The notes: generated from the letters alone by a model not told the origin. 64,000 bases of DNA from Dendrobates tinctorius (GCF_039654945.1 NW_027361696.1:11904001-11968000), one strand, 5' to 3'. Positions 8,254 through 63,027 are shown, counted from the stretch's first letter. Numbers and translations are program-made.

Positions 8254-8504
8254 TCACACCGGCTCCGTCGGTACTGTGTCCTGAGGGGTGACTTTACAGG
8301 GTCGAACGTTGTTCTGTAAGATGCAGCTGCGAGTGCAGAGGTGACAGGAGGCGCAAAACGAGTTGCAGCAGGGGATGAATCTGCAGACGCCGACTCTCCA
8401 GATAAACCAGCCTGGAGACCAGCAACACCAGAACAAGAGAGCGACGCTGACCACGAAGCCCAGGATGACGTACAGGTAGAGGAAGGAGGCATAGGATCTC
8501 CGCT
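8254..8504 (-). CDS. LDLRAD2: LDLRAD2 exon 5 (TM helix and Cys-rich tail): ERRSYASFLYLYVILGFVVSVALLFWCCWSPGWFIWRVGVCRFIPCCNSFCASCHLCTRSC...TEPV*
   Basis: tctatcttgcag acceptor; phase 1 matches upstream exons; about 21 hydrophobic residues then WCCWSPGWF, recalled from non-mammalian LDLRAD2; TGA ends at 8254. Confidence 0.85.
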
Positions 8505-15410: not shown

Positions 15411-16040
15411 TATACGTTCCAAACACCACCATGGTTTGTTTTGTTTTGTTTTTTTGCAGCATTTGCAGAAAAAATGTTTAATCTTCCGAAACGGCAGTAA
15501 AAATGCTGTAGTTTATCCATGATTTCAGAGTCACAGTGAACACACCAAGTCTTGTGGGACCCACGTGAATTCCTGGCTGGAGGCATGTGGGAGATGACAC
15601 AGCATCGGTGACACCCACTCACATCCATCATCCATGCGGCACTGGCTGCTCCTGTGCTACGTGTGTTGCACCACGCTGACTGACCATTACTAACTCCTAT
15701 ACTATGTTAGTAGGTGGACGTCCAATACTCAAAGAACCACAAGCACCAGCAAACCCCTGGTTACTGCCACTGACTGGTGACTGCAAAATAAGGCCCAGGC
15801 ATCATCAGCCGCTGATGGACCATCCATGTACTACAGGCAGCACCTAATGTCTCAGGGACAGATGGTCAGACATGATAACATGCAACATGTGCGATCCGTG
15901 TCCCTTCTGACTGATGAGACAGACAGGTGTCCACGTATACCCACGAGTATATGTGCGATCCGTGTCCCTTCTGACTGATGAGACAGACAGGTGTCCACGT
16001 ATGCCCACGAGTATATGGACCCTCAGTAAATGTCAGGTAC

Positions 16041-16193
16041 CTAAGCTGGAGCCATGAGGTTGGACGTCTGGAACAAGCGGCTTCTGATTTGCCTCATTCC
16101 CACAGGTGAGATTTCCCGCCAGCACCTGCAGATCTGGTACAGTAGTCGTGCCGGGGTTTTTGGCTTCAGCTGGAGTTCTGGTGCCCATGGTAC
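16041..16193 (-). CDS. LDLRAD2: LDLRAD2 exon 4 (Thr/Pro-rich stalk): GTMGTRTPAEAKNPGTTTVPDLQVLAGNLTCGNEANQKPLVPDVQPHGSSL
   Basis: gattggcag acceptor and tag|gtacct donor; 153 nt, phase 1-1, open. Sequence is poorly conserved so the boundaries are inferred. Confidence 0.6.
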   Translation of the reverse strand, partial: VPWAPELQLKPKTPARLLYQICRCWREISPVGMRQIRSRLFQTSNLMAPA

Positions 16194-16289
16194 CTGCCAA
16201 TCGTACACATGAGGAACAGTGAGGGTCCGATCTGTTAACAGGGGAGGGAGGTACATCTGGCATCTTTCTCTGAGGTGCTCAGCACCATT

Positions 16290-16690
16290 CACAACACATG
16301 CAGGAGACATAAGGGACCTTCGTCTTTCATCCCAGCAGGTCAGAGACATGAGGGACCCCCATTCTTCCTTGTCAGACCCAGGCGGGTCAGAACAGAGACA
16401 TGAGGGACCACCATCCTTCCTCGTCATTCCACTGCGGGTTAGAGCAGAGACATGAGTGACCCTCCGTCCTTCCTCAGAGCCCGGCTGGTCAGAGCAGAGA
16501 CATGAGGGACCCCCATCCTTCCTTGTCAGACCCTGGTGGGTCAGAGCAGAGACATGAGGAACCCCCATCCTTCCTCCTTAGACCCCAGTGAGTCAGAACA
16601 GAGACATGAGGGTCCCCCATTGTTCCTCCTCAGACCCCGGCGGGTCAGAGCAGAGACATGAGGGACCCCCGTTCTTCCTCCTCAGACCCT
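16290..16690. repeat. ~53-bp tandem repeat (gtcagagcagagacatgagggacccccatccttcct) in LDLRAD2 intron 3
   Basis: About 7 degenerate copies. Confidence 0.9.
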
Positions 16691-16737
16691 GGAAGTGTGC
16701 CACCAATGATCCCTCCAGTCAGACACAGAGCGCTCAC

Positions 16738-16914
16738 CTGTGCCGCCGCTTCTTCTGTTCGTGGAGACGCAGTTGGCTGGGGGTCCGCTGGCCTGATCGC
16801 TGCCATCTCCACAGTTATCGATGTTCTGAGGGTCACAAACCAGGCTGTCCGGGACACATTTACCATTATGGCAGGAGAAGTACGGCTCTGACCGGCACTC
16901 CGAGATGTTGAAGC
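16738..16914 (-). CDS. LDLRAD2: LDLRAD2 exon 3 (LDL-receptor class A repeat): GFNISECRSEPYFSCHNGKCVPDSLVCDPQNIDNCGDGSDQASGPPANCVSTNRRSGGT
   Basis: gctttccag acceptor and cag|gtgagc donor; 177 nt, phase 1-1; six-Cys LDLa pattern. Confidence 0.95.
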
Positions 16915-17027: not shown

Positions 17028-17480
17028 CTACTCGAAAGGAGGTGAAGTCTCCCACAAAGTCCACTCTGGGCTGCTGCCCGCGGGTCACCAGGCGCAGGGT
17101 CAGGTAGGCTCCGGTGGACAGGACGGGCCGGGGGATCGTTTTACCACAAAGTGGGAAGCCCAACGGCTCAGCATGGAGGTCTTTGCCATTGTAGAACTGG
17201 ATGTAGGAGCCGGCATTACAGGGGTCACTATGGGTTCCTGGGGGCCGCCTGGTGTCCTGGGAGGGTGAAGCACGGGCACTGCCATTGGACATCCGCAGGA
17301 GGCTATACACCAGGAAGAAGCGGAACTGGAACTGAATCTTGTCCTTCAGGGCGGCCGCCCGCATGGTCACATGGCAGTCGGTACCTGTTTCCACAAAGTA
17401 GTACTTCCGGGATTCGGCGTGTGAGCGAACAATCATCCCATCTCCCCCGACCGTCTGTCCGCAGAGTTCCACCATGCTGA
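17028..17480 (-). CDS. LDLRAD2: LDLRAD2 exon 2 (CUB-like domain): VSMVELCGQTVGGDGMIVRSH...FQFRFFLVYSLL...LRLVTRGQQPRVDFVGDFTSFRVG
   Basis: ccctctgcag acceptor and tag|gtgagt donor; 453 nt, phase 1-1; strong similarity to recalled LDLRAD2 (ELCGQT, FQFRFFLVYSL, RLVTRG.QPRVDFVG). Confidence 0.95.
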
Positions 17481-17984
17481 CTGCAGAGGGACATGACACA
17501 GCGGTTATTACATATATATGACGGCAGACCGGCAGTAAGCGCCCCCCACCGAGAAGAAAGAAACGGCAAACCCCTTACCACCCATCCCCCTCACACCTGG
17601 GCTCCGACCAGGCGTCTTCTGACCGCAGGTTGTCATGCCAGAATCAAGGTGAAAACATGATGTTTCATGCACAACCAGCACCGCAGCATTCAGGCCAGCA
17701 CCGACAGTGTAATAGACCCCGCAGCTGTGCAGGATGAGACTGAGGAAGAGACCGAACTTAAAACCCAGAATAGAGGGAGGCGTGCAGCTGCCATGACAGG
17801 TGAAGAAACGAGCCGTGTGCAGCCACGCTCCATCAGGCAGGTGACGCCTCGTCCTTTAACCCAGTGTCATCGTGGCCTCTGGAGAATTTCCAGCCTCCCC
17901 TTTTACTGCCTCGGTCTCCAGGCAGACATGGCCCTGAATCTGGGGAGACGAAAGGCCAAAGTATAGAAACCACGAAGCCCAACA

Positions 17985-20530
17985 ATGAAGGCGGAGAACC
18001 GGACGCTGGAGGAGAGGAGCCGGAGAATGGAGACGAGGAACCGGACGCTGAAAGAGAGAAGTCGGTTAATGGAGGCGAGGAGTCAGACGCTGGAGGACAG
18101 CAGCCGGATGCTGAAAGAGAGGAGCCGGAGAATGGAGGCAAGGTGCCGGACGCTGAAAGAGAGGAGCTGGAGGAGAGGAGCCAGAGAATGGAGGTGAGGA
18201 GCCGGACGCTGAAAGCGAGGAAATGAGCTGGAGGCAAGCAGCCAGACATTGGAGGCACGGACAATAATGGACACGAGGACAGAAGACTGGGGCAAGGAAT
18301 TGCATCCATGCTGCATGACTAAGGAGAATGAAGGCGAGGAATTGGACGCTGGAGTAGAGGAGCCAGAGAATGGTGATGAGGAATCGGACGCTGGAAGAGA
18401 GAAGCCAGTTAATGGAGGCGAGGAGCTAGACGCTGGAGGAGAGGAGCCAGACGCTGGAGGAGAGGAGCCGGACGCTGAAAGAGAGGAGCCGGAGAATGGA
18501 GGCAAGGAGCCGGACGCTGAAAAAGGAGCTGGAGGAGAGGAGCCAGAGAATGGAGATGAGGAGCCGGACGCTGAAAGCGAGGAGCCGGACGCTGGAGGAA
18601 ATGAGCTGGAGGCAAGCAGCCAGACACTGGAGGCACGGACAATAATGGACACGAGGACAGAAGACTGGGGCAAGGAATTGCATCCATGCTGCATAACTAA
18701 GGAGAATGAAGGCAAGGAATTGGACGCTGGAGTAGAGGAGCCAGAGAATGGTGACGAGGAACCGGACGCTGGAAGAGAGAAGCCAGTTAATGGAGGCGAG
18801 GAGCTAGACGCTGGAGGAAAGGAGCCGGAGAATGGAGGCAAGGAGCCAGACGCTGAAAGAGAGGAACCGGAGAATGGAGGCGAGGAGCCGGACGCTGGAG
18901 GAGGGGAGCCGGTCGCTGGAGGAGAGGAGCCAGAGCGCTGAAACAGAGGAGCAGGATGCTGGAGGAGAGGAGCCGGACGCTGAAAGAGAGGATCTGGAGG
19001 AGAGGAGACAGAGAATGAAGGAGAGGAGACGGAGAATGGAGGCAAGGAGCCGGACGCTGAAAGAGAGGAACCGGAGAATGGAGGCGAGGAGCCGGACGCT
19101 GGAGGAGAGGAGCCGGAGAATGGAGGCGAGGAGCCGGACGCAGGAGGAGAGGAGCCGGTCGCTGGAGGAGAGGAGCCAGAGCGCTGAAACAGAGGAGCAG
19201 GATGCTGGAGGAGAGGAGCCGGACGCTGAAAGAGAGGATCTGGAGGAGAGGAGACAGAGAATGGAGGCAAGGAGCCGTACGCTGAAAGAGAGGAACCGGA
19301 GAATGGAGGCGAGGAGCCGGACGCTGGAGGAGAGGAGCCGGTCGCTGGAGGAGAGGAGCCAGAGCGCTGAAACAGAGGAGCAGGATGCTGGAGGAGAGGA
19401 GCCGGACGCTGAAAGAGAGGATCTGGAGGAGAGGAGACAGAGAATGAAGGAGAGGAGACGGAGAATGGAGGCAAGGAGCCGGACGCTGAAAGAGAGGAAC
19501 CGGAGAATGGAGGCGAGGAGCCGGACGCTGAAAGAGAGGAACCGGAGAATGGAGGCGAGGAGCCGGACGCTGGAGGAGAGGAGCCGGTCGCTGGAGGAGA
19601 GGAGCCAGAGCGCTGATACAGAGGAGCAGGATGCTGGAGGAGAGGAGCCGGACGCTGAAAGAGAGGATCTGGAGGAGAGGAGACAGAGAATGAAGGAGAG
19701 GAGACGGAGAATGGAGGCAAGGAGCCGGACGCTGAAAGAGAGGAACCGGAGAATGGAGGCGAGGAGCCGGACGCTGGAGGAGAGGAGCCAGAGCGCTGAA
19801 ACAGAGGAGCAGGATGCTGGAGGAGAGGAGCCGGACGCTGAAAGAGAGGATCTGGAGGAGAGGAGACAGAGAATGAAGGAGAGGAGACGGACGCTGAAAG
19901 CGAGGAGCTGGAGGAGAGGAGCCGGAGAATGAAGGCGAGGAGCCAGACGCTGAAGGCGAGGAGCCGGACGCTGGAGGAGAGGAGCCGGTCGCTGGAGGAG
20001 AGGAGCCAGAGCGCTGAAACAGAGGAGCAGGATGCTGGAGGAGAGGAGCCGGACGCTGAAAGAGAGGATCTGGAGGAGAGGAGACAGAGAATGAAGGAGA
20101 GGAGACGGAGAATGGAGGCAAGGAGCCGGACGCTGAAAGAGAGGAACCGGAGAATGGAGGCGAGGAGCCGGACGCTGGAGGAGAGGAGCCGGTCGCTGGA
20201 GGAGAGGAGCCAGAGCACTGAAACAGAGGAGCAGGATGCTGGAGGAGAGGAGACAGAGAATGAAGGAGAGGAGACAGACGTTAAAAGCGAGGAGCTGGAG
20301 GAGAGGAGCCGGAGAATGAAGGCGAGGAGCCGGACGCTGAAGGCGAGGAGCAGGATGCTGGAGGAGAGGAGCCGGACACTGAAAGAGAGGAGCTGGAGGA
20401 GAGGAGCTGGAGAATGAAGGCGAGGAGCCAGACGCTGAAAGCGAGGAGCCGGACGCTGGAGGAAAGGAGCTGCAGGCAAGCAGCCAGACACTGGAGGCAC
20501 GGACAATAATGGACACGAGGACAGAAGATT
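17985..20530. repeat. Purine-rich 21-bp-based minisatellite (gacgctggaggagaggagccg) with higher-order blocks
   Basis: Tandem 21-mers and variants; diagnostic block ggcaagcagccagaca...ggacaataatggacacgagg at about 18233, 18611 and 20476. Confidence 0.95.
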
Positions 20531-20789
20531 CGTGTGCCACGTTGCAAGCAGAAGACGACTGTGGCTTGTGGCCCCAGCTCCGCTCAGGACATATCGTCCT
20601 TCCGTGGACCGGCCCCCGCCTCGAGGACGGCCTCATGGTCCAGACTGATGGTTGGGGCCCGTTCACACACCCAGTGCCGGCTTCTCATCCACCATTGTTT
20701 TTTCTGGCCGTTTTCCTGCGTTGCTCATTTTTCATTCCCATTAGATAAGTCATCCATGAGATAAAAATGAAAAAAGGCAATAGGGATCG

Positions 20790-21065
20790 GTCGATGCCGG
20801 GGACCCCACAATAGGGTCTAGCGATACCAAGGACCCACACAATAGGGCCCAAACGATACCAGGGACCCCATAATATGGCCCGGCCAATACCAAGGACCAT
20901 CACAATAGAGTCCGGCTGATACCAGGGACCCACAGAATAGGGTCCGGCTGATACCAGGGACCTACAATAGGGTCGGTGACACCAGGACCCACACAATAGG
21001 GCCTGAACGATACCAAGGATCATCTATAATAGAATCCGGCCGATACCAGGGACCCACACAATAGG
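20790..21065. repeat. ~32-bp tandem repeat (gataccagggacccacaatagggtccggc)
   Basis: About 8 degenerate copies. Confidence 0.85.
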
Positions 21066-21409
21066 ACCCTACAGGACTGCCGCCAATACATCATGGCTCC
21101 ATCACGAGGGACAGGATCTATCATTCTACAGGAAACAACCTAGGGACCTCGGCCCCAGTTGGAAGAATACAGATCTGCTCCATTGACCATCACTGAACCA
21201 TGGTTATGTTTGGAGAAAGCCTGGATTGGGACCCGCTGGTCGCCTGACTCTATCGAGATGTTTGGAGAAGCCAGGTTGTGACCCTCGGGTCAACTGGCCT
21301 TGTACCTTAATGGACTCTCATCTTCCTATGCTTGTCGTTACCTCCTCTCTGTGTGCGTGCCAAAGATGGGGTAGTCGACCCTGGAAGCTCTGACATAACA
21401 GCTGAGTAC

Positions 21410-21840
21410 TGTGGGAGGGGTTATACAGAGTGTGCTGGGCGGGGTTATGCAGAAGGGCTGTGGGCATGGTTATACAGAGTGCTCTGGGTGCAGTTATTCA
21501 GAGTGCTGTGGGTGGGTTTATACAAAGTATTCTGGACGGGGTTATACAGAGTGCTCTGGGTGGGGTTATACGGAGTGCTCTGGGCAGGCTTTTTTCAGAG
21601 TGCTTTGGGTGCGGTCATACAGAGTGCTGTGGGATGAGTTATACAAAGTGCTCTGGGTGGGTTTATAGAGTGCTGTTGGCAGGTTATACAGAGCGTTGTG
21701 GGCGGGGTTTTACAGCGCACTGTGGGTGGGGTAATACAGAGCACTGTGGGTGGAGTTATAGAGTGCTGTTGGAGGGGTTATACAGAGTGCTGTGGGCGGG
21801 GTTATACAGAGTGCTGTGGGTGGCATAATAAAGAGTGCTG
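21410..21840. repeat. ~22-bp tandem repeat (gggttatacagagtgctgtgggc)
   Basis: About 19 degenerate copies. Confidence 0.9.
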
Positions 21841-22689
21841 GGGGATCTGCAGGAGTGAAAACACGGATTTTATCAAAACTGCAGCAAGCGGCTCAGTAAG
21901 TGACACATCGCTGGAATCAGTGTATCCGCCCCAACACCATGCTGTTCTGAGATGGGGAGTGAAAACTTGGTGACAGATTTCTTTATATATCAAATTAGTT
22001 TCATTATACGGTTGTGTAAATATTATCTAGTTAGCACTATCCATAATATCGCCATATATGATACCGCCATATATTATACCACATCCACTCAAGTTGAGAG
22101 CTTCAACTTCCACCTGAGTGACACAACCCAGGGACAGAGCAGAAGACCACAGAATGTACCGTGCTGCAATAATGTATCACACAGCACAGTATATACAGGA
22201 CAGAGATCAGATACCGCGTGTCACACACTCCAGAATTTGAGCAGTGGACAGAGGAGGACAGTGGACTCCTGACGACCGACAGCGAAAATCCACAAAAAAT
22301 CAAGCAACGACACAAAGCAGCCAAAGATCTAGAAATCACTGACAACATCTGTGGAGGAGAAAAAAATCAAAGTGTCGGAAACGGAATAAAATCTTCAAAA
22401 CAAAGAAGTAAAATTCCTGGTGGTAAACGAGAAAACGTCAGAGAGGAAGGAACAGCCCAGGATCAGCGAGGGCAGCGAAGAAACCAGGACAAAGTACTGA
22501 AAACAAGGGCTGACCAATCATCAGACGGCAGAAGCTACCCAAGTGTGCAACAACGAAAGAAGCCAGAGAATAGCAGATACGAGTGTGAAGAACAGTGTCA
22601 GGTCTGGAACCATAATACACAGGAGCAACAGGAATAATAAGTAACGGAGCAAGGCCGAAATATGGACAGAGGGGCACCACTCCGCATCA

Positions 22690-25600
22690 CAGCCCCACAG
22701 TATCACAGGGGAGGATGAAATACACAGCCCAACAAGATCATAGGGGAGGATGAGATACACGGCCCAACAGTATCACAGGGGAGGATGAAATACACAGCCC
22801 AACAAGATCATAGGGGAGGATTAGATACACAGCCCAACAGTATCACAGGGGAGGATGAGATACACGGCCCAACAGTATCACTGGGGAGGATGAGATACAC
22901 GGCCCAACAAGATCATAGGGGAGGATGAGATACACGGCCCAACAGTATCACAGGGGAGGATGAGATACACGGCCCAACAGTATCACACAGGGGAGGATGA
23001 GATACACGGCCCAACAGTATCACAGGGGAGGATGAGATACACGGCCCAACAGTATCACACAGGGGATGAGATACACGGCCCAACAAGATCATAGGGGAGG
23101 ATGAGATACACGGCCCAACAGTATCACAGGGGAGGATGAGATACACGGCCCAACAGTATCACTGGGGAGGATGAGATACACGGCCCAACAAGATCATAGG
23201 GGAGGATTAGATACACAGCCCAACAGTATCACAGGGGAGGATGAAATACACAGCCCAACAAGATCATAGGGGAGGATTAGATACACAGCCCAACAGTATC
23301 ACAGGGGAGGATGAGATACACGGCCCAACAGTATCACTGGGGAGGATGAGATACACGGCCCAACAAGATCATAGGGGAGGATGAGATACACGGCCCAACA
23401 GTATCACAGGGGAGGATGAGATACACGGCCCAACAGTATCACACAGGGGAGGATGAGATACACGGCCCAACAGTATCACACAGGGGATGAGATACACGGC
23501 CCAACAAGATCATAGGGGAGGATGAGATACACGGCCCAACAGTATCACAGGGGAGGATGAGATACACGGCCCAACAGTATCACAGGGGAGGATGAGATAC
23601 ACGGCCCAACAGTATCACACGGGGAGGATGAGATACATGGCCCAACAAGATCATAGGGGAGGATGAGATACACAGCCCAACAAGATCATAGGGGAGGATG
23701 AGATACACAGCCCAATAGTATCACAGGGGAGGATGAGATACACGGCCCAACAAGATCACAGGGGAGGGTGAGATACACAGCCCAACAGTATCAGAGGGGA
23801 GGATGAGATACACGGCCCAACAGTATCAGAGGGGAGGATGAGATACACGGCCCAACAGTATCAGAGGGGAGGATGAGATACACGGCCCAACAAGATCATA
23901 GGGGAGGATGAGATACACAGCCCAACAGTATCACAGGGGAGGATGAGATACACGGCCCAACAGTATCACACAGGGGAGGATGAGATACACGGCCCAACAG
24001 TATCACAGGGGAGGATGAGATACACGGCCCAACAGTATCACAGGGGAGGATGAGATACACGGCCCAACAAGATCATAGGGGAGGATGAGATACACAGCCC
24101 AACAGTATCACAGGGGAGGATGAGATACACGGCCCAACAGTATCACACAGGGGAGGATGAGATACACAGCCCAACAAGATCACAGGGGAGGGTGAGATAC
24201 ACGGCCCAACAGTATCACAGGGGAGGATGAGATAAACGGCCCAACAGTATCACAGGGGAGGATGAGATACACGGCCCAACAGTATCACAGGGGAGGATGA
24301 GATACACGGCCCAACAAGATCACGGGAGGATGAGATACACGGCCCAAAAGTATCACACAGGGGAGGATGAGATACACGGCCCAACAAGATCATAGGGGAG
24401 GATGAGATACACAGCCCAACAAGATCATAGGGGAGGATGAGATACACAGCCCAACAAGATCATAGGGGAGGATGAGATACACAGCCCAACAAGATCATAG
24501 GGGAGGATGAGATACACGGCCCAACAAGATCATAGGGGAGGATGAGATACACAGCCCAACAAGATCATAGGGGAGAATGAGATACACAGCCCAACAAGAT
24601 CATAGGGTAGGATGAGATACACAGCCCAACAGTATCACAGGGGAGGATGAGATACACGGCCCAACAAGATCATAGGGGAGGATGAGATACACAGCCCAAC
24701 AGTATCACAGGGGAGGATGAGATACACGGCCCAACAGTATCACAGGGGAGGATGAGATACACGGCCCAACAGTATCACAGGGAGGATGAGATACACGGCC
24801 CAACAGTATCATAGGGGAGGATGAGATACACGGCCCAACAAGATCATAGGGGAGGATGAGATACACAGCCCAACAGTATCACAGGGGAGGAGGAGATACA
24901 CGGCCCAACAGTATCACAGGGGAGGAGGAGATACACGGCCCAACAAGATCAGGGGAGGATGAGATACACAGCCCAACAGTATCACAGGGGAGGATGAGAT
25001 ACACGGCCCAACAGTATCACAGGGGAGGAGGAGATACACGGCCCAACAGTATCACAGGGGAGGATGAGATACACGGCCCAACAAGATCAGGGGAGGATGA
25101 GATACACAGCCCAACAGTATCACAGGGGAGGATGAGATACACAGCCCAACAGTATCACAGGGGAGGAGGAGATACACGGCCCAACAGTATCACAGGGGAG
25201 GAGGAGATACACAGCCCAACAGTATCACAGGGGAGGATGAGATACACGGCCCAACAAGATCAGGGGAGGATGAGATACACAGCCCAACAGTATCACAGGG
25301 GAGGATGAGATACACGGCCCAACAGTATCACACAGGGAAGGATGAGATACACGGCCCAACAAGATCATAGGGGAGGATGAGATACACAGCCCAACAAGAT
25401 CATAAGGGAGGATGAGATACACAGCCCAACAGTATCACAGGGGAGGATGAGATACATGGCCCAACAGTATCACACAGGGGAGGATGAGATACACGGCCCA
25501 ACAAGATCATAGGGGAGGATGAGATACACGGCCCAACAGTATCACACAGGGGAGGATGAGATACACGGCCCAACAAGATCATAGGGGAGGATGAGATACA

Positions 25601-26956
25601 CAGCCCAACAAGATCATAGGGGAGGATGAGATACACAGCCCAACAAGATCATAGGGGAGGATGAGATACACGGCCCAACAAGATCATAGGGGAGGATGAG
25701 ATACACAGCCCAACAAGATCATAGGGGAGAATGAGATACACAGCCCAACAAGATCATAGGGGAGGATGAGATACACAGCCCAACAGTATCACAGGGGAGG
25801 ATGAGATACACGGCCCAACAAGATCATAGGGGAGGATGAGATACACAGCCCAACAGTATCACAGGGGAGGATGAGATACACGGCCCAACAGTATCACAGG
25901 GGAGGATGAGATACACGGCCCAACAGTATCACAGGGGAGGATGAGATACACGGCCCAACAGTATCATAGGGGAGGATGAGATACACGGACCAACAAGATC
26001 ATAGGGGAGGATGAGATACACAGCCCAACAGTATCACAGGGGAGGAGGAGATACACGGCCCAACAGTATCACAGGGGAGGAGGAGATACACGGCCCAACA
26101 AGATCAGGGGAGGATGAGATACACAGCCCAACAGTATCACAGGGGAGGATGAGATACACGGCCCAACAGTATCACAGGGGAGGAGGAGATACACGGCCCA
26201 ACAGTATCACAGGGGAGGATGAGATACACGGCCCAACAAGATCAGGGGAGGATGAGATACACAGCCCAACAGTATCACAGGGGAGGATGAGATACACAGC
26301 CCAACAGTATCACAGGGGAGGAGGAGATACACGGCCCAACAGTATCACAGGGGAGGAGGAGATACACGGCCCAACAGTATCACAGGGGAGGAGGAGATAC
26401 ACGGCCCAACAAGATCAGGGGAGGATGAGATACCCAGCCCAACAGTATCACAGGGGAGGATGAGATACACGGCCCAACAGTATCACACAGGGGAGGATGA
26501 GATACACGGCCCAACAAGATCATAGGGGAGGATGAGATACACAGCCCAACAAGATCATAAGGGAGGATGAGATACACAGCCCAACAGTATCACAGGGGAG
26601 GATGAGATACACGGCCCAACAAGATCATAGGGGAGGATGAGATACACAGCCCAACAGTATCACAGGGGAGGATGAGATTCACGGCCTAATAGTATCACAG
26701 GAGAGGATGAGATACACGGCTCAGCAGACAGTATCACACAGGAGAGGATTAGATACACAGCTCAGCAGACAGTATCACACAGGATAGGATTAGATACACA
26801 GCTCAGCAGTCAGTATCACACAGGAGAGGATTAGATACACGGCTCAGCAGTCAGTATCACACAGAAGAGGATTAGATACACGGCTCAGCAGTCAGTATCA
26901 CACAGGAGAGGATTAGATACACGGCTCAGCAGACAGTATCACACAGAAGAGGATTA
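22690..26956. repeat. ~35-bp minisatellite (ggggaggatgagatacacggcccaacagtatcaca) grading into a ~41-bp variant (ggagaggattagatacacggctcagcagacagtatcacaca)
   Basis: More than 100 highly homogeneous copies; 1155-bp internal duplication (near-identical ORFs at 24856 and 26011). Confidence 0.97.
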
Positions 26957-27314
26957 GGCTAAGTGCACACGCTGCGGATTGGTCTGCGGAATTTTATCTG
27001 CAGAACCTCAGGTAAAACCGCAGGTAAAATGAGCTGCGGTTTTACCAGCGGATTGGCCTGCGGTTTATCACCTCTACAATGGAGGAGATGGTAAACCGCA
27101 GCAGAATCCGCAGAAAAGAAGTGACATGTCATTTCTTTCTGCGGATTCAAAACCGCAGCTTTTCCGCAGTTAAAAATCCGCAGCATGTGCACAGCAGATT
27201 GTAAATCACATAGGATAACATGCTACTGTACACTGTCTGCAGTACTGCTGCAGTTCTGCTGCGGCCAAAACCGCAGCGGATCCGCAGCATAAACCGCAGC
27301 GTGTGCACATGGCC
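26957..27314. mobile_element. Harbinger-type MITE
   Basis: TTA|ggctaagtgcacacgctgcgg...ccgcagcgtgtgcacatggcc|TTA. Confidence 0.88.
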
Positions 27315-28014
27315 TTAGACAGGCTCAGACTGGCCCACAGGGTAACAGGGGAATCCCCTGGTGGGCCCCTGTGCAGATCTGGGCCCCCAACCCCACTATA
27401 TGGATAATACTTGGTATAATTCACTTGATTTACTCCGTACAGAAAAAAACAGCATCTCATCATTCATTAACCAAACTGCACAGCTTATTATATAGGGAAA
27501 TAGGTAAATTTGTGAATGAGGGTAGTGTAATATTTGTATACTGGTGAAAAGTGGGCCCTTGGCACCCCAGTCCGACACTGGGATTAGATACACGGCTCAG
27601 CAGACTATCACACAGGAGAGGATTAGATACACTGCTCAGCAGACATTATCACACAGGAGAAGATTAGATACACGGCTCATCCTTAAGGTTGTTTCCATAT
27701 CCGCGCTGGATGACGAGTTTCTTTGACTGTAACATGTGCACAAGACAAAGTGATGAGGAATGAAGACAGTGATCCCCAATGGGGTAGTGATGTCTGTACA
27801 GTGCTGCAGTATGTGATGGTGACATATAAGCACATATAAAAAATCTACAGGTTTCTACATTGGATTTTAGAAGTCACCGACAAATATAGAGGAACCCCCA
27901 TCAGCCGAATATAACAGGACCCCACCGTCCCTCAGCGTGGATCCTCCGGGGCAGCACATCAGCCCGTCTATACATGACCCAAAAAGTTCCCACTCAGAGT
28001 CACAGACCCCACAG

Positions 28015-30815
28015 AAACCCCGTTATCCCGCTGTAGGGAGCAGAGACCCCTGTTACCCCTCTGTAGGGAGCAGAGACCCCTGTTACCCCTCTGTAGGGAG
28101 CAGAGAACCTTGTTACCCCTCCGTAGGGAGCAGAGACCCCCGTTACCCCTCCGTAGGGAGCAGAGACCCCCGTTACCCCGCTGTAGGGAGCAGAGACCCC
28201 CGTTACCCCGCTGTAGGGAGCAGAGACCCCCATTACGCCCCTGTAGGGAGAAGAGACCCCGTTACCCTTCTGTAGCGAGTAGAGACCCCCGTTACCCCTC
28301 TGTAGGGAGCAGAGATTCCCATTACCCCTCTATAGGGAGCAGAGACTCCCGTTAACCCTTTGAAGGGAGCAGACACCCCCGTTACCCCACTGTATGGAGC
28401 AGAGATCCCCTTTACCTCTCTGTAGGGAGCAGAGACCTTCTTTACCCTACTGTAGGGAGCAGAGACCCCGTTTACCAATCTGTAAGTAGCAAAAACCCCT
28501 TAACCCCTCTGTAGGGAGCAGAGACCCCCGTTACTCCACTGTAGGGAGTAGAGACCCCCGTTACCTCTCTGTAGGGAGCAGAGACCCCTGTTACCTCTCT
28601 GTAGGGAGCAGACACCCCCATTACCCCTCTGTAAGGAGCAGACAACCCCTTCACCCCTCTGTAAGGAGCAGAGACCCCATTACCCGTCTGTAGGGAGCAG
28701 ACACCCCCGTTTCCCCACTGTATGGAGCAGAGACCCCTGGTATCCCTCTGTAGGGAGCAGAGACCCCGTCACCCCTCTGTATGGAGCAGACACCCCCATT
28801 ACCCCTCTGTAGGGAGCAGAGACCCCTGTTACCTGTCTGTAGGGAGCAGAGACCACCGTTACCCATCTGTAGGTAGCAGAGACCCCCGTTACTCTGCTGC
28901 AGGGAGCAGAGACCCCCCGTTACCCCTCTGTATGGAGCAGAGACACCCATTACCTGTCTGTAGGGAGAAGAGACCCCGTTACACGTCTGTAGGGAGCAGA
29001 GACTCCCATTACCTGTCTGTAGGGAGCAGAGATCTCCGTTACCTGTCTGTAGGGAGCAGAGACCCCAGTTACCTGTCTGTAGGAAGCAGAGACCCCCGTT
29101 ATGCCTCCGTAGAGAACAGAGACACCCATTACTATCACTGTACGGATCAGTGACGTCGTTAACCGTCTGTAGGGAGCAGAGACCCCATTACGCATCTGTA
29201 GGGAGCAGAGACTCCCATTACCTGTCTGTAGGGATAAGAGACCCCCGTTACCTATCTGTAGGGATCAGAGATCCCCGTTACCCCTCTGCAGGGAGCAGAG
29301 ACACCCATTACCTGCATGTACGGAGCAGAGACCCCGTTACACGTCTGTAGGGAGCAGAGACTCCCATTACCTGTCTGTAGGTAGCAGAGATCCCCGTTAC
29401 CCCTCTGTAGGGAGCAGAGATCCCATTACCTGTCTGTAGGGAGCAGAGACCTCGTTACCCCTCTGTAGAAAGCAGAGACATCTGCAAACACCTACAAACA
29501 GGTGTAGGGAGCAGAGACCCAAGTTACCTGTCTGTAGGAAGCAGAGACCCCCGTTACGCCTCCGTAGGGAACAGTGACACCCATTACTGTCACTGTACGG
29601 AGCAGTGACGTAGTTACCCATCTGTAGGGAGCAGAGACCCCGTTACGCATCTGTAGGGAGCAGAGACCACCGTTACCCATCTGTAGGTAGCAGAGACCCC
29701 CGTTACTCTGCTGCAGGGAGCAGAGACCCCCCCGTTACCCCTCTGTATGGAGCAGAGACACCCATTACCTGTCTGTAGGGAGAAGAGACCCCGTTACACG
29801 TCTGTAGGGAGCAGAGACTCCCATTACCTGTCTGTAGGGAGCAGAGATCTCCGTTACCTGTCTGTAGGGAGCAGAGACCCCAGTTACCTGTCTGTAGGAA
29901 GCAGAGACCCCCGTTATGCCTCCGTAGAGAACAGAGACACCCATTACTATCACTGTATGGATCAGTGACGTCGTTAACCGTCTGTAGGGAGCAGAGACCC
30001 CATTACGCATCTGTAGGGAGCAGAGACTCCCATTACCTGTCTGTAGGGATAAGAGACCCCCGTTACCTATCTGTAGGGATCAGAGATCCCCGTTACCCCT
30101 CTGCAGGGAGCAGAGACACCCATTACCTGCATGTACGGAGCAGAGACCCCGTTACACGTCTGTAGGGAGCAGAGACTCCCATTACCTGTCTGTAGGTAGC
30201 AGAGATCCCCGTTACCCCTCTGTAGGGAGCAGAGATCCCATTACCTGTCTGTAGGGAGCAGAGACCTCGTTACCCCTCTGTAGAAAGCAGAGACATCTGC
30301 AAACACCTACAAACAGGTGTAGGGAGCAGAGACCCAAGTTACCTGTCTGTAGGAAGCAGAGACCCCCGTTACGCCTCCGTAGGGAACAGTGACACCCATT
30401 ACTGTCACTGTACGGAGCAGTGACGTAGTTACCCGTCTGTAGGGAGCAGAGACCCCGTTACGCATCTGTAGGGAGCAGAGACTCCCATTACCTGTCTGTA
30501 GGGAGCAGAGACCCCTGTTACCTGTCTGTAGGGAGCAGAGATCCCCGTTACCCCTCTGTAGGGAGCAGAGATCCCCGTTACCCCTCTGTAGGGAGCAGAG
30601 ACCCCGTTACCCCTCTGTAGGGAGCAGAGACATCTGCAAACACCTACAAACAGGTGTAGGGAGCAGAGACCCCAGTTACCTGTCTGTAGGAAGCAGAGAC
30701 CCGCGTTACGCCTCCGTAGGGAACAGAGACCCCCATTACCGGTCTGTATGGAGCAGAGACCCCCGTTACCCCTCTGTAGGGAGCAGAGACCCTGTTACCT
30801 GTCTGTAGGGAGCAG
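28015..30815. repeat. 29-30-bp minisatellite (minus-strand unit tgctccctacagacaggtaacagggtctc) overlapping the LDLRAD2 exon 1 donor
   Basis: About 95 copies; 815-bp internal duplication (near-identical ORFs at 28950 and 29765). Confidence 0.97.
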
Positions 30816-30874
30816 GTGGGAGCCATGATCATCATCAGCAGACATAGCGGTGGTAGCGGCCGTGGCGTCCTCAT
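30799..30874 (-). CDS. LDLRAD2: LDLRAD2 exon 1 (signal peptide): MRTPRPLPPLCLLMMIMAPTCSLQT
   Basis: ATG with A at -3; basic N-terminus plus hydrophobic core; acag|gtaaca donor in phase 1 joins exon 2 as SLQT-V-SMVELCG, paralleling recalled human ALET-A-DLAELCG. Confidence 0.8.
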
Positions 30875-31099
30875 CCTGGCACCGCTCACAGTGACGGTAG
30901 CAGAGTCCAGCTCCTCGCTGAGTACAATGGACCCCACAAGTCGCTGCCGTCTGCAGGACGAGCCTCTTTGTTTTCAGGTTTTGTGTCTCATCGTCTCCAT
31001 GACAACCACAAGTGCAAGAGGGGTGTGAGGGTGAGTAGCCCACCCAATGCAGCCGCCTGTCACCGTCATCCTACAGCATGTCACTACTATAAGGACTTC

Positions 31100-33570
31100 G
31101 AACACGTCACCGCTCTAATACCGAACCGTGCAGGATATCACCGCTCTAATACAGAACCGTACAGGACGTCACCGCTCTAATGCCGAAACGTACAGGACGT
31201 CATCGCTCTAATACTGAAACGTACAGGACGTCACCGCTCTAATACCGAACCGTACAAGACGTCACCATTCTAATACCGAACAGCATCGACATCACGGGTC
31301 TAATGCCGAAAGGTACAGGACGTCATCACTCTTAATACCGAACCGTAAAGGATGTCACCGCTCTATTACCAAACTATACAGGATGTCACCGCTCTAATTC
31401 CGAACCGTACAGGACGTCACCGCTCTTAATACGGAATCGTACAGGATGTCACCGCTCTAATACCTAACGGCACCGATGTTACCGGTCTAATGCCAAAATG
31501 CACAGGATGTCATCGCTCTAATACCGAACCATACAAGACGTCACCACTCTAATACCAAACCGTAAAGGATGTCATCGCTCTAAGGCTGAGTGCACACGTT
31601 GCAGAAAATTTCTGCTCAAAAACCTGAATCCCTTCCCAGAAACCGCGGCGTTTTTGGCGCGGTTTTGATGCGTTTTTGATGCGTTTTTTCCACAGCGGTT
31701 TCAAACCGCATGGAAGAAGCCAAAACCGCGGAAACATTCGCAAAATTAATGAGCATGCTGCGTTTTTTACCGCGATGCGTTTTTTTCATGGTAAAAAACG
31801 CATCAATGTGCACAAAAAGTGCAAAATGCATAGAAATGACTGGGAAGCTTATTTTTAGCGGTTTTATAGTGAAAACCGCTGTAAAAACCGCTAAAAAAAC
31901 GCTGTGTGTGAACACAGCCGAACCATACAGGATGTCACCACTCTAATACAGAACCGTAAAGGATGTCATCGCTCTAATACCGAACCATACAGGACGTCAC
32001 TGCTCTAATACAGAACCGTAAAGGATGTCATCGCTCTAATACCGAACCATACAGGACGTCACCACTCTAATACCAAACCGTACAGGACGTCACCGTTTTA
32101 ATACCGAACCGTACAGAACGTTACCGCTCTAATACTGAAACGTCCAGGACGTCACCGTTCTAATACCGAACCGTACAGTCAATGCTCTAATACTGATCTG
32201 TAAAGGATGTCACCGCTCTAATACCAATCCGTACAGGACGTCACCGCTCTAATACAGAACCGTAAAGCATGTCACCGTTCTAATACCAAACTATACAGGA
32301 TGTCACGCTCTAATTCCTAACCGCACCGATGTTACTGGTCTAATGCCAAAATGCACAGGATGTCACCGCTCTAATACCGAACCATACAGGACGTCACCGC
32401 TCTAATACAGAATCGTAAAGGATGTCACCGCTCTAATACCGAATCACACAGGACGTCACCGCTCTAATACCACACCGAACAGGACGTCACCGCTTTAATA
32501 CCGAACTGTACAGAAAGTTACTGCTCTAATACTGAAACGTCCAGGACGTCACCGTTCTAATATCGAACCGTACAGTACTTCACTCTAATACTGATCCGTA
32601 CAGGACGTCACCGCTCTAATACAGAACCGTAAAGGATGTCACCGCTCTAATACCGAACCATACAGGACATCACCGCTCTAATACCGAACCGTACAGGGCG
32701 TCATCGCTCTAATACCAAACCGTACAGGACGTCACCGCTCTAATACCTAACTGTACAGGACGTCACCGTTCTAATCTCGAACCGTAAAGGTTGTCACCGC
32801 TCTAATACCAAACCGTAAAGGTTGTCACCGCTCTAATACCAAACCGTAAAGGTTGTCACCGCTCTAATACCAAACCGTATAGGTTGTCACCGCTCTAATA
32901 CTGAACCATACAGGACATCACCACTCTAATACCGAACCATACAGGATGTCACCACTCTAATATCGAACCGCACTGATGTCACTGCTCTAATACCAAACTG
33001 TACCGACGCCACCGTTCTAATACCGAACCATATAGGACTTCACCGCTTTAATATTAAACCATTCAGGACGTCACCGCTCTAATGCCAAACCGCACAGGAC
33101 GTCACCGCTCTAATACTAAACCGTATAAGGCGTCACCACTCTAATACCGAACCGTACAGGACGCCACCGCTCTAATACCAAACCGTATAGAACGTTTCCG
33201 CTCTAATACTGAACCATACAGGACGTCACCACTCTAATACCAAACCGTACAGGATGTCACCGCTCTAATACCGAACCGTAAAGGATGTCACCGCTCAAAT
33301 ACTAAATCGTACAGGACTTCACCGATCCAATACCGAACCGTACAGGACATCACCGCTCTAATACCGAACCGTAAAGGACATCACCGCTCTAATATTGAAC
33401 CGTACAGGACATCACCGCTCTAATACCGAACCGTGGAGGACATCACGCCTCTAATACCGAACCTTACAGGGCATCACGGCTCTAATACCGAACCGTACAG
33501 GACGTCACCGTTCTAATACCGATCTGCACAGGACGTCACCGTTCTAATATCGAACCGCACCGATGTCACT
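31100..33570. repeat. 31-bp minisatellite (ccgctctaataccgaaccgtacaggacgtca) directly upstream of LDLRAD2 exon 1
   Basis: About 65-70 copies, interrupted by a MITE. Confidence 0.97.
31584..31919. mobile_element. Harbinger-type MITE inserted in the 31-mer array
   Basis: taa|ggctgagtgcacacg...gtgtgaacacagcc; palindromic ccgcgg-rich interior. Confidence 0.75.
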
Positions 33571-62893: not shown

Positions 62894-63027
62894 NNNNNNN
62901 NNNNNNNNNNNNNNNNNNNNNNNNNNNNNNNNNNNNNNNNNNNNNNNNNNNNNNNNNNNNNNNNNNNNNNNNNNNNNNNNNNNNNNNNNNNNNNNNNNNN
63001 NNNNNNNNNNNNNNNNNNNNNNNNNNN
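62894..63027. other. Assembly gap (134 N) in USP48 intron 4
   Basis: Run of N. Confidence 0.99.

What the first reader, a model, noticed from the sequence alone, without database searches (positions are those of the whole stretch)
28015..30874. A 5' splice site amplified about 95-fold: the LDLRAD2 intron 1 minisatellite is the exon 1/intron 1 junction
Seen: on the minus strand exon 1 ends ...acc TGC TCC CTA CAG ACA G|gtaacagggtctc, and this 29-mer is the unit of the array that follows for 2.8 kb. The first unit therefore encodes the CSLQT end of the signal peptide and the donor. Nearly all copies keep GTAA. Many copies at about 28830-30690 keep the full ACAG|GTAA(c/t), while distal copies mostly read AGGG|GTAAC. 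Inference: the gene presents dozens of competing U1 sites. Units of 29/30 nt would put most alternative donors out of frame, while some could add VSAPYRxV-type repeats after the signal peptide. Array length could therefore tune expression or isoforms.
Basis: partly seen in the sequence, partly recalled or inferred. Interest (0 to 1): 0.72.

Follow-up and report, generated by a model that had tools for sequence, protein, structure and literature searches.

The report
Splice-donor minisatellite in frog LDLRAD2 intron 1
Intron 1 of a poison frog's LDLRAD2 gene begins with 93 tandem copies of its own exon-1/intron-1 junction. Assembled mRNA uses only the first, genuine splice site, so this is a very large but ordinary example of a repeat type already known from human F7, IFI6 and CBS and from amphioxus "mirages".

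Summary
A 30-bp minisatellite (28018-30815, minus strand, 93 units) starts 17 nt inside the first coding exon of LDLRAD2. Exon 2 is 100% identical to a Dendrobates tinctorius protein. Unit 1 carries the end of the signal-peptide exon plus the GT donor. Transcript contigs from two runs break exactly at 30799 and continue with the first 30 letters of exon 2 (17480), so the exon and donor are real.

GTAA survives in 79 units. Twenty-two pseudo-sites pair with U1 as well as the authentic CAG|GTAAC.

The functional reading is not supported. No contig enters units 2-3. The donors of units 2-6 are all out of frame, and every later donor lies behind a TAG at 30646-30644. No VSAPYR-insert isoform is therefore possible on this allele; any alternative donor gives a premature stop.

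The architecture is a known class: F7 IVS7, IFI6, CBS, LMNB2 and PDGF (PMC1557585) and amphioxus mirages (PMC3087553). There, as a rule, the most upstream donor wins.

This scan already reported the same kind at seven other genes of this genome: GALNT16, MRAS, MRPL37, EIF1AD, TRIM69, SURF2 and ODAD3. The window is 41% tandem repeat and intron 1 is 75%.

Verdict: a real, unusually large new member of a known kind, most likely neutral.

The parts
30799..30874 (-). Coding part of LDLRAD2 exon 1. ATG at 30874, 25 codons plus 1 nt (phase 1), encoding the signal peptide MRTPRPLPPLCLLMMIMAPTCSLQT.
   Evidence: Sequence. Identical N-terminus in P0001. tblastn of P0001. Contigs of X15 and X16 cover it with no differences.
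30875..31103 (-). 5'UTR, at least this far. The X15 contig runs about 127 nt further, into the 31-bp minisatellite at 31104-31583.
   Evidence: table 8: record 1 positions 1598-1902 lie on 30799-31103 and the record is 2029 long. X16 record 3 likewise.
30797..30798 (-). [quoted passage not shown] It is the only donor seen in transcripts.
   Evidence: Loose ends at 30799 in X15 and X16 equal the start of exon 2.
28018..30815 (-). Minisatellite of 93 units of 29-30 nt, consensus CTGCTCCCTACAG-AGGG|GTAAC-GGGGGTCT. The first unit is the exon 1/intron 1 junction.
   Evidence: TRF. Unit tables. Column conservation.
30644..30646 (-). TAG that closes the exon-1 reading frame inside the 39-nt variant unit 6. 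Every donor downstream of it lies behind a premature stop.
   Evidence: the read-through ORF is 76 aa.
29635..30449 (-). Higher-order repeat, copy A (27 units, 815 bp).
   Evidence: 809 of 815 identical to copy B. Offset 815 is the second-best self-match.
28820..29634 (-). Higher-order repeat, copy B (27 units, 815 bp).
28018..28819 (-). Distal, more degenerate part of the array. Units are mostly AGGG|GTAAC (weak pseudo-donors), and several have lost GT.
   Evidence: units 67-93.
17481..30798 (-). Intron 1, 13,318 nt, of which 75% is tandem repeat in five separate arrays.
17028..17480 (-). Exon 2 (CUB-like domain). Acceptor ctctgcag|TC, phase 1 in and out.
   Evidence: Sequence. 100% identity to P0001, and 249 LDLRAD2-type hits. 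Weak Pfam CUB match.
16737..16914 (-). Exon 3 (LDL-receptor class A domain).
   Evidence: Pfam PF00057, E = 1.7e-6. tblastn.
8254..8504 (-). Last coding exon (transmembrane segment and Cys-rich tail, ERRSYASF...TEPV, plus stop).
   Evidence: tblastn of P0001. Acceptor read.

Best explanation
This is a junction minisatellite of the 'mirage' or F7-IVS7 type. A segment of about 30 bp, made of the last 17 nt of LDLRAD2 exon 1 plus the first 12-13 nt of intron 1, was duplicated in tandem into the intron. It then expanded by slippage or unequal exchange to 93 units, and one step of that expansion was a recent 815-bp (27-unit) duplication.

The exon end is ancient and the array is derived from it, not the reverse.

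The pre-mRNA therefore carries the authentic donor followed by 22 equally good and about 55 weaker pseudo-donors. The spliceosome still uses the most upstream, cap-proximal one, as in the known human cases. The copies are removed with the intron and have no detectable effect on the mRNA.

Shown here: the array, the exon, the junction used, and the frame consequences.

Inferred: the neutral origin, the reason for first-site choice (5'-to-3' 'first come' selection, helped by the cap at a first exon), and the silence of the pseudo-sites at low level.
For: Array and unit anatomy.

Gene identity and model: exon 2 is 100% identical to D. tinctorius LDLRAD2 isoform X4, with hundreds of vertebrate orthologues. 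The P0001 N-terminus equals the exon 1 + exon 2 reading. All exons were placed by tblastn.

Junction use: in two runs, contigs with no mismatch end at 30799 and continue with the first 30 letters of exon 2. No contig lies on 30725-30798.

The exon end predates the array. The residues before the junction are conserved: CSLQT|V in D. tinctorius, HCLQT|V in Ranitomeya, CPLQT|V in Phyllobates, FSLET|V in Leptodactylus, QSLET|V in Xenopus and YTIET|V in Ascaphus. By contrast, the two higher-order copies in the array differ at only 6 of 815 positions.

No sign of selection on the donors. GTAA (88-99% per column) is no better kept than the pyrimidine block CTGCTCCCTACAG (83-100%). The +5 C/T variation fits CpG decay.

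Context: 41% of the window and 75% of intron 1 is tandem repeat, in 22 loci, so seeding of an array on a junction needs no special cause.

Precedent: F7, IFI6, CBS, LMNB2 and PDGF have the same architecture. In F7 the pseudo-sites are functional but lose to the most upstream site (PMC1557585). Amphioxus mirages do not disturb splicing (PMC3087553).
Against: The transcript evidence is from assembled contigs, which drop rare isoforms. Products of the pseudo-donors would carry premature stops and be degraded, so low-level use cannot be excluded.

Reads were laid only on 30725-31103 (units 1-3), because the reads tool turns away long repeats. Donors deeper in the array, including the strong one in unit 5 at 30680, were not examined.

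In IFI6 and CBS the two proximal pseudo-sites are used.

The array length rests on one assembly. No genomic DNA of relatives could be fetched, so the age of the array is unknown.
Confidence: 0.85

Rival explanations
1. The pseudo-donors compete for U1. A fraction of transcripts is spliced from them, and array length or composition tunes LDLRAD2 output. Given the frames, this would work through NMD of frameshifted or stop-containing mRNAs, not through insert isoforms.
For: 22 pseudo-sites have the same seven contiguous U1 pairs as the authentic site, and five (CAG|GTAACT) have one more match. IFI6 and CBS do use proximal pseudo-sites. NMD would hide such products from contig assemblies.
Against: Both transcript assemblies show only the 30799 junction, and nothing lies on units 2-3. 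Units 2-4 have weak -3..-1 contexts (GGG, CCG, GGC). The first equal site is 119 nt downstream. In-frame insert isoforms are impossible on this allele. In F7, identical and even stronger pseudo-sites do not compete.
Confidence: 0.08
2. The array is a splicing platform. Each unit carries a branch-like TAAC, a pyrimidine tract and CAG directly followed by GTAAC, which is the form of a recursive splice site. The array could be removed stepwise, or could recruit U1 and so enhance the upstream donor or protect the long repeat-rich intron.
For: 75 of 93 units have at least 10 of 14 pyrimidines followed by AG. 21 of them then read ACAG|GTAA. TAAC lies 21-22 nt before the next AG in 41 cases.
Against: These motifs come for free from the copied exon end, which codes APTCSLQT. 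An earlier AG (TACAG) lies 4 nt upstream of the CAG|GT, and its use would add 4 nt. No RNA evidence bears on this, and no conservation data exist. The same architecture elsewhere is treated as neutral.
Confidence: 0.04
3. Artefact or reverse origin. Either the array length or its 815-bp duplication is a mis-assembly, or a pre-existing intronic minisatellite supplied the exon end by exonisation or conversion, rather than the exon seeding the array.
For: The array itself was not checked with independent reads here. The two higher-order copies are 99.3% identical, a situation in which assemblers can err.
Against: The six differences between the copies argue for two real copies. The exon end S/P-L-Q/E-T|V is conserved out to Xenopus and Ascaphus, so it is far older than any array whose units are still 77% alike. 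Unit 1 is confirmed by RNA as far as the donor.
Confidence: 0.03

Closest known systems
Human F7 intron 7 VNTR (37 bp x 5-9), Borensztajn et al. 2006, PMC1557585
   Same: The first monomer spans the exon-intron boundary. The authentic donor is followed by identical pseudo-donors. Only the most upstream one is used in normal transcripts.
   Different: F7 copies only 4 exonic nt, against 17 here. It has 5-9 copies against 93. It sits at an internal exon, not a first exon. Its pseudo-sites are strictly identical, whereas here they form subfamilies (23 CAG|GTAA, the rest weaker). Function of the pseudo-sites was shown by mutagenesis in F7 and has not been shown here.
Human IFI6 (6-16) intron 2 and CBS intron 13 junction minisatellites (as summarised in PMC1557585)
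   Same: Tandem reiteration of a splice donor, with 25 pseudo-sites in IFI6 and 15-20 repeats in CBS.
   Different: [quoted passage not shown] Here the contigs show none. Here the proximal three are weak and out of frame.
Human LMNB2 (100 bp x 10-15) and PDGF intron 4 (81 bp x 16-18) (PMC1557585)
   Same: A junction-spanning minisatellite in which only the authentic donor is used.
   Different: Longer units and far fewer copies.
Amphioxus 'mirages' (Adh3, globins BflGb6 and BflGb9), PMC3087553
   Same: Minisatellite-like tandem duplications of exon-intron boundaries. They are length-unstable and do not disturb normal splicing.
   Different: They occur in a cephalochordate, have units of 10-160 bp and few copies, and duplicate both 5' and 3' boundaries.
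Other junction minisatellites of this same genome noted by this scan (GALNT16, MRAS, MRPL37, EIF1AD, TRIM69, SURF2, ODAD3)
   Same: The same species and the same architecture, and the same result that assembled mRNA uses the first donor (earlier notes, not re-tested here).
   Different: This one is the largest by copy number (93, against 72 for SURF2). It lies at the signal-peptide exon.

Membership tests
Junction minisatellite (mirage / F7-IVS7 type) | Head-to-tail tandem array with a unit of about 10-160 bp | tested here: met
   TRF: period 30, 92.9 copies, score 2875. 93 units listed.
Junction minisatellite (mirage / F7-IVS7 type) | The first unit spans a genuine, transcript-verified exon-intron boundary | tested here: met
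   Contigs of two runs join 30799 to the start of exon 2. The P0001 N-terminus agrees. Unit 1 is 30815-30787.
Junction minisatellite (mirage / F7-IVS7 type) | The donor sequence is reiterated in the following units | tested here: met
   GTAA is present in 79 of 93 units and CAG|GTAA in 23. Nine units repeat the 17 exonic nt plus GTAA exactly.
Junction minisatellite (mirage / F7-IVS7 type) | Normal splicing is kept: the most upstream donor, or at most the first few, is used | tested here: inconclusive
   At contig level only 30799 is used, and nothing lies on units 2-3.
Junction minisatellite (mirage / F7-IVS7 type) | Length polymorphism (VNTR) among alleles | not tested
No second haplotype or individual was available.
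LDLRAD2 orthologue | CUB-like domain, then an LDLa domain, then a TM segment and a Cys-rich tail, with orthologues named LDLRAD2 | tested here: met
   Exon 2 gave 249 hits, nearly all of the named ones called LDLRAD2, the best at 100% identity. Pfam LDLa in exon 3 and a weak CUB match in exon 2. The full protein was placed on the window.
Recursive splice site (ratchet point) | A pyrimidine tract and AG juxtaposed to a regenerated 5' splice site (YnNCAG|GTAAGT-like) | tested here: met
   21 units read Py-rich...ACAG|GTAA(C/T). This is a motif match only, and +5G is absent.
Recursive splice site (ratchet point) | Use in vivo (saw-tooth read density, lariats or intermediate junctions) and evolutionary conservation | not testable with these tools
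   This needs total or nascent RNA reads over the array and genomes of relatives. Neither was available.

The most novel reading that the evidence does not exclude
The array is not inert. It might act as a ladder of recursive-type sites or a U1 landing pad that affects splicing or NMD-coupled output of LDLRAD2 according to its length. Or, more broadly, the recurrence of donor-junction minisatellites in at least eight genes of this frog might reflect a mutational process that preferentially seeds or retains arrays at 5' splice sites. That would make this genome a natural library for testing how the spliceosome chooses among identical donors.
Probability: 0.07. Interest if true: 0.65.

Novelty: new member of a known kind. 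Interest (0 to 1): 0.25.

Why it matters
As a single locus it matters little. It adds a frog example, with the highest copy number I am aware of (93, against 5-26 in the human cases cited in PMC1557585), to a class described since the 1990s.

Its use is as a natural experiment. There are 22 pseudo-donors equal to the authentic one, all of them non-productive, downstream of a first exon. If raw reads confirm exclusive use of the first site, that extends the 'most upstream site wins' rule of F7 to a cap-proximal exon and to a 2.8-kb array.

Together with the seven sister loci already noted in this genome, it suggests that minisatellite-rich frog genomes hold many such arrays. A genome-wide count of donor-side against acceptor-side arrays, observed against expected, could test whether they are merely tolerated or are favoured.

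Tried and rejected
1. Genomic DNA of the orthologous junction in relatives could not be obtained. For Ranitomeya imitator (P0002) the gene range of 170 kb is too long. For Phyllobates terribilis (P0121) the sample file is too large. Leptodactylus, Xenopus and Ascaphus isoforms are not on record. Only the protein N-termini could be compared.

2. A word search with the exon-1 read-through ORF (30647-30874) looked for called ORFs from unspliced or alternatively spliced contigs, or from relatives' arrays. No candidate was found. A search with residues 1-40 of P0001 found only the three dendrobatid proteins, none with an insert after LQT.

Runs X1 and X2 (organism A) gave nothing on that stretch.

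4. MaxEntScan and SignalP are not available. I used a rough position matrix recalled from memory, used only for ranking, and a count of U1 base pairs.

5. The joined exon1+exon2 model was not built or searched. Exons were handled one by one by reference, and frames were computed from offsets.

6. I looked for selection on the donors in the column conservation and rejected it: GTAA is no better kept than the rest of the unit.

7. I rejected the idea that the weak proximal pseudo-sites (units 2-4) show purifying selection. With 25% strong units, three weak ones in a row has a probability of about 0.4.

8. The unit core has no real copies outside the array. There are only two 2-mismatch chance hits, at 32591 and 2770.

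Full report
**What is there**

On the minus strand, TRF finds one array at 28018-30815 with period 30, 92.9 copies, 77% matches and score 2875. Anchoring on the conserved core gives 93 units. Of the 92 spacings, 61 are 30 nt, 22 are 29 nt, five are 31, one is 32 and three are 39.

The consensus unit is a pyrimidine-rich block ending in TACAG, then four variable bases, then GTAAC and a G-run. Unit 1 (30815-30787) consists of the last 17 nt of a coding exon, whose last base is 30799, followed by GTAACAGGGTCT. The 15 nt upstream of 30815 do not look like a unit tail, so the array begins there. Nine other units repeat those 17 exonic nt plus GTAA exactly.

**Is the exon real?**

Yes. The ORF downstream at 17480-17028 was searched by reference, restricted to the exon. 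It is 100% identical to LDLRAD2 isoform X4 of Dendrobates tinctorius (P0001) and 91% identical to Ranitomeya imitator. There were 249 significant hits, and nearly all of the named ones are called LDLRAD2.

Exon 3 (16914-16737) carries a Pfam LDL-receptor class A domain, and exon 2 has a weak CUB match. P0001 starts with the 25 residues encoded from ATG 30874 and continues across the junction as ...CSLQT|VSMVELCGQ. tblastn places all of its exons in the window. The phases agree: exon 1 ends in phase 1 and exon 2 starts in phase 1.

There is independent transcript evidence. I laid Logan contigs of four runs on 30725-31103. In X15 and X16 (organism C), contigs with no mismatch cover the stretch from 30799 to 31103. 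They break exactly at 30799 with a 255-nt loose end. The 30-letter consensus of that loose end is the reverse complement of the first 30 bases of exon 2, as read. Both contigs are long, at 2029 and 1577 nt.

Nothing lies on 30725-30798, that is, units 2-3. Runs X1 and X2 gave nothing.

**Anatomy of the array**

- GTAA stands at the donor position in 79 units, and GT in 88.
- 23 units, counting the authentic one, read CAG|GTAA. These make the same seven contiguous base pairs with the 5' end of U1 snRNA, whose sequence is established knowledge.
- Five of them (CAG|GTAACT) have one more match than the authentic CAG|GTAACA.
- None has the consensus +5G, so units with GGG, GGC, CGT and the like at -3..-1 are weak sites.
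- The strong units all lie between 28833 and 30799. The distal 800 bp is a more degenerate AGGG|GTAAC subfamily in which several units have lost GT.
- The +5 C/T alternation sits in a CpG and fits CpG decay.
- Per column, GTAA (88-99%) is no better conserved than the pyrimidine block (83-100%). I see no signature of selection on the donors.
- The array is hierarchical. 30449-29635 and 29634-28820 are two 815-bp, 27-unit copies that are 809/815 identical, so more than a quarter of the array stems from one recent duplication.

**Consequences of using another donor**

The exon-1 frame stays open for only five units and closes at TAG 30646-30644, inside a 39-nt variant unit.

The donors of units 2-5 are at +29, +59, +89 and +119 nt, all 2 mod 3. 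The GT in unit 6 is at +151, which is 1 mod 3. Exon 2 read in these two shifted frames stops after 15 and 58 codons. All remaining donors lie behind the TAG.

Every alternative donor therefore gives a premature stop far upstream of later junctions. Such transcripts are expected NMD substrates (inference from established rules).

The copied exon end is pyrimidine-rich and ends in CAG, so each unit also looks like an intron end. In 75 units at least 10 of 14 bases are pyrimidines before an AG. In 21 units this is followed by ACAG|GTAA, the form of a recursive splice site. A branch-like TAAC lies 21-22 nt upstream of the next AG in 41 cases.

I treat this as a by-product of the sequence that was copied. 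No RNA evidence bears on it.

**Direction of origin**

The residues before the junction are conserved across frogs: HCLQT|V in Ranitomeya, CPLQT|V in Phyllobates, FSLET|V in Leptodactylus, QSLET|V in Xenopus and YTIET|V in Ascaphus. The exon end is therefore old and the array was seeded from it.

Whether other dendrobatids share the array could not be tested, because no genomic DNA of relatives could be fetched.

**Context**

The window holds 22 separate tandem-repeat loci covering 41% of its length. Intron 1 (13,318 nt) is 75% tandem repeat, in five arrays.

Here is a rough estimate (inference). With about 22 arrays per 64 kb and units of about 30 bp, the chance that one of them was seeded on one of the four donor junctions of this gene is a few per cent per window of this kind. 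In a minisatellite-rich genome, such loci are therefore expected now and then without any special mechanism. Arrays that extend from a donor into the intron are also the kind least likely to be removed by selection, if the first site wins.

Consistent with this, the scan's notes list seven other junction minisatellites in this same genome: GALNT16, MRAS, MRPL37, EIF1AD, TRIM69, SURF2 and ODAD3. I did not re-test them.

**Comparison with what is known**

Borensztajn et al. 2006 (PMC1557585) describe exactly this architecture.

- In human F7 intron 7 (37 bp x 5-9, first monomer spanning the boundary), the pseudo-sites are functional. Even so, the most upstream site is always chosen, even over stronger downstream copies.
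- The same paper lists IFI6/6-16 (25 pseudo-sites, the two proximal ones used) and CBS (15-20 repeats, two used).
- It also lists LMNB2 and PDGF, where only the authentic site is used.
- In amphioxus, such arrays are called mirages and do not disturb splicing (PMC3087553).

The LDLRAD2 array meets the structural criteria of this class. Exclusive first-site use is met at contig level only, and length polymorphism was not tested. It differs in scale (93 units, 2.8 kb), in copying 17 exonic nt, in sitting at a cap-proximal signal-peptide exon, and in its subfamily and higher-order structure.

**Limits**

- Contigs cannot exclude rare isoforms.
- The reads tool turns away long repeats, so I worked beside the array and did not lay it.
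- The splice-site matrix was recalled from memory and was used only for ranking.
- MaxEntScan and SignalP were not available.
- The joined exon1+exon2 model was not built or searched. Exons were treated one by one by reference.

**Verdict**

The functional interpretation is unsupported, and its insert-isoform part is excluded on this allele. This is a very large new member of a known kind, most likely neutral (confidence 0.85). Interest is low to moderate (0.25).

Noticed in passing
window 17481-30798: LDLRAD2 intron 1 is 75% tandem repeat. It holds five unrelated arrays: 18323-20470 (21/42 bp), 20778-21069 (32 bp), 21404-21844 (24 bp), 22688-26957 (35 bp, about 120 copies) and the junction array. 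The whole window is 41% tandem repeat, in 22 loci.
   Followed up: partly
window 31104-31583 (and 31918-33557): A 31-bp minisatellite lies directly upstream of exon 1. Transcript contigs of X15 and X16 run about 127 nt past 31103 into it. Either the 5'UTR includes several of its units or the contigs break there; the true transcription start is unknown.
   Followed up: partly
window 30975-31001, minus strand: The 5'UTR holds a short upstream ORF (two ATGs, then TGA after 8 codons) ahead of the main ATG at 30874.
   Followed up: no
window 30628-30666, 30291-30329, 29476-29514: Three copies of a 39-nt variant unit carry an insert in place of the donor. The first supplies the TAG that closes the exon-1 frame. 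Their spacing marks the higher-order structure.
   Followed up: yes
window 16341-16689: A 52-bp minisatellite starts 48 nt after the exon 3 donor (16737) without including it. Its unit shares the decamer GTCTCTGCTC with the 30-bp junction unit, which may be chance.
   Followed up: no
window about 16045-16195, minus strand: An alternative exon (TMGTRTPAEAK...PHGSSL) is present in Ranitomeya isoform X1 and in Phyllobates but skipped in D. tinctorius isoform X4. A 64-bp two-copy repeat (15887-16017) follows it.
   Followed up: partly
(orthologues): Many annotated frog LDLRAD2 models (Bufo, Hyla, Mantella, Pyxicephalus, Anomaloglossus) start at MVDFCGQ inside exon 2. Their signal-peptide exon 1 seems to be missed by annotation.
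   Followed up: no
window 62894-63027: A run of 134 N (gap or masked). Left untouched.
   Followed up: no
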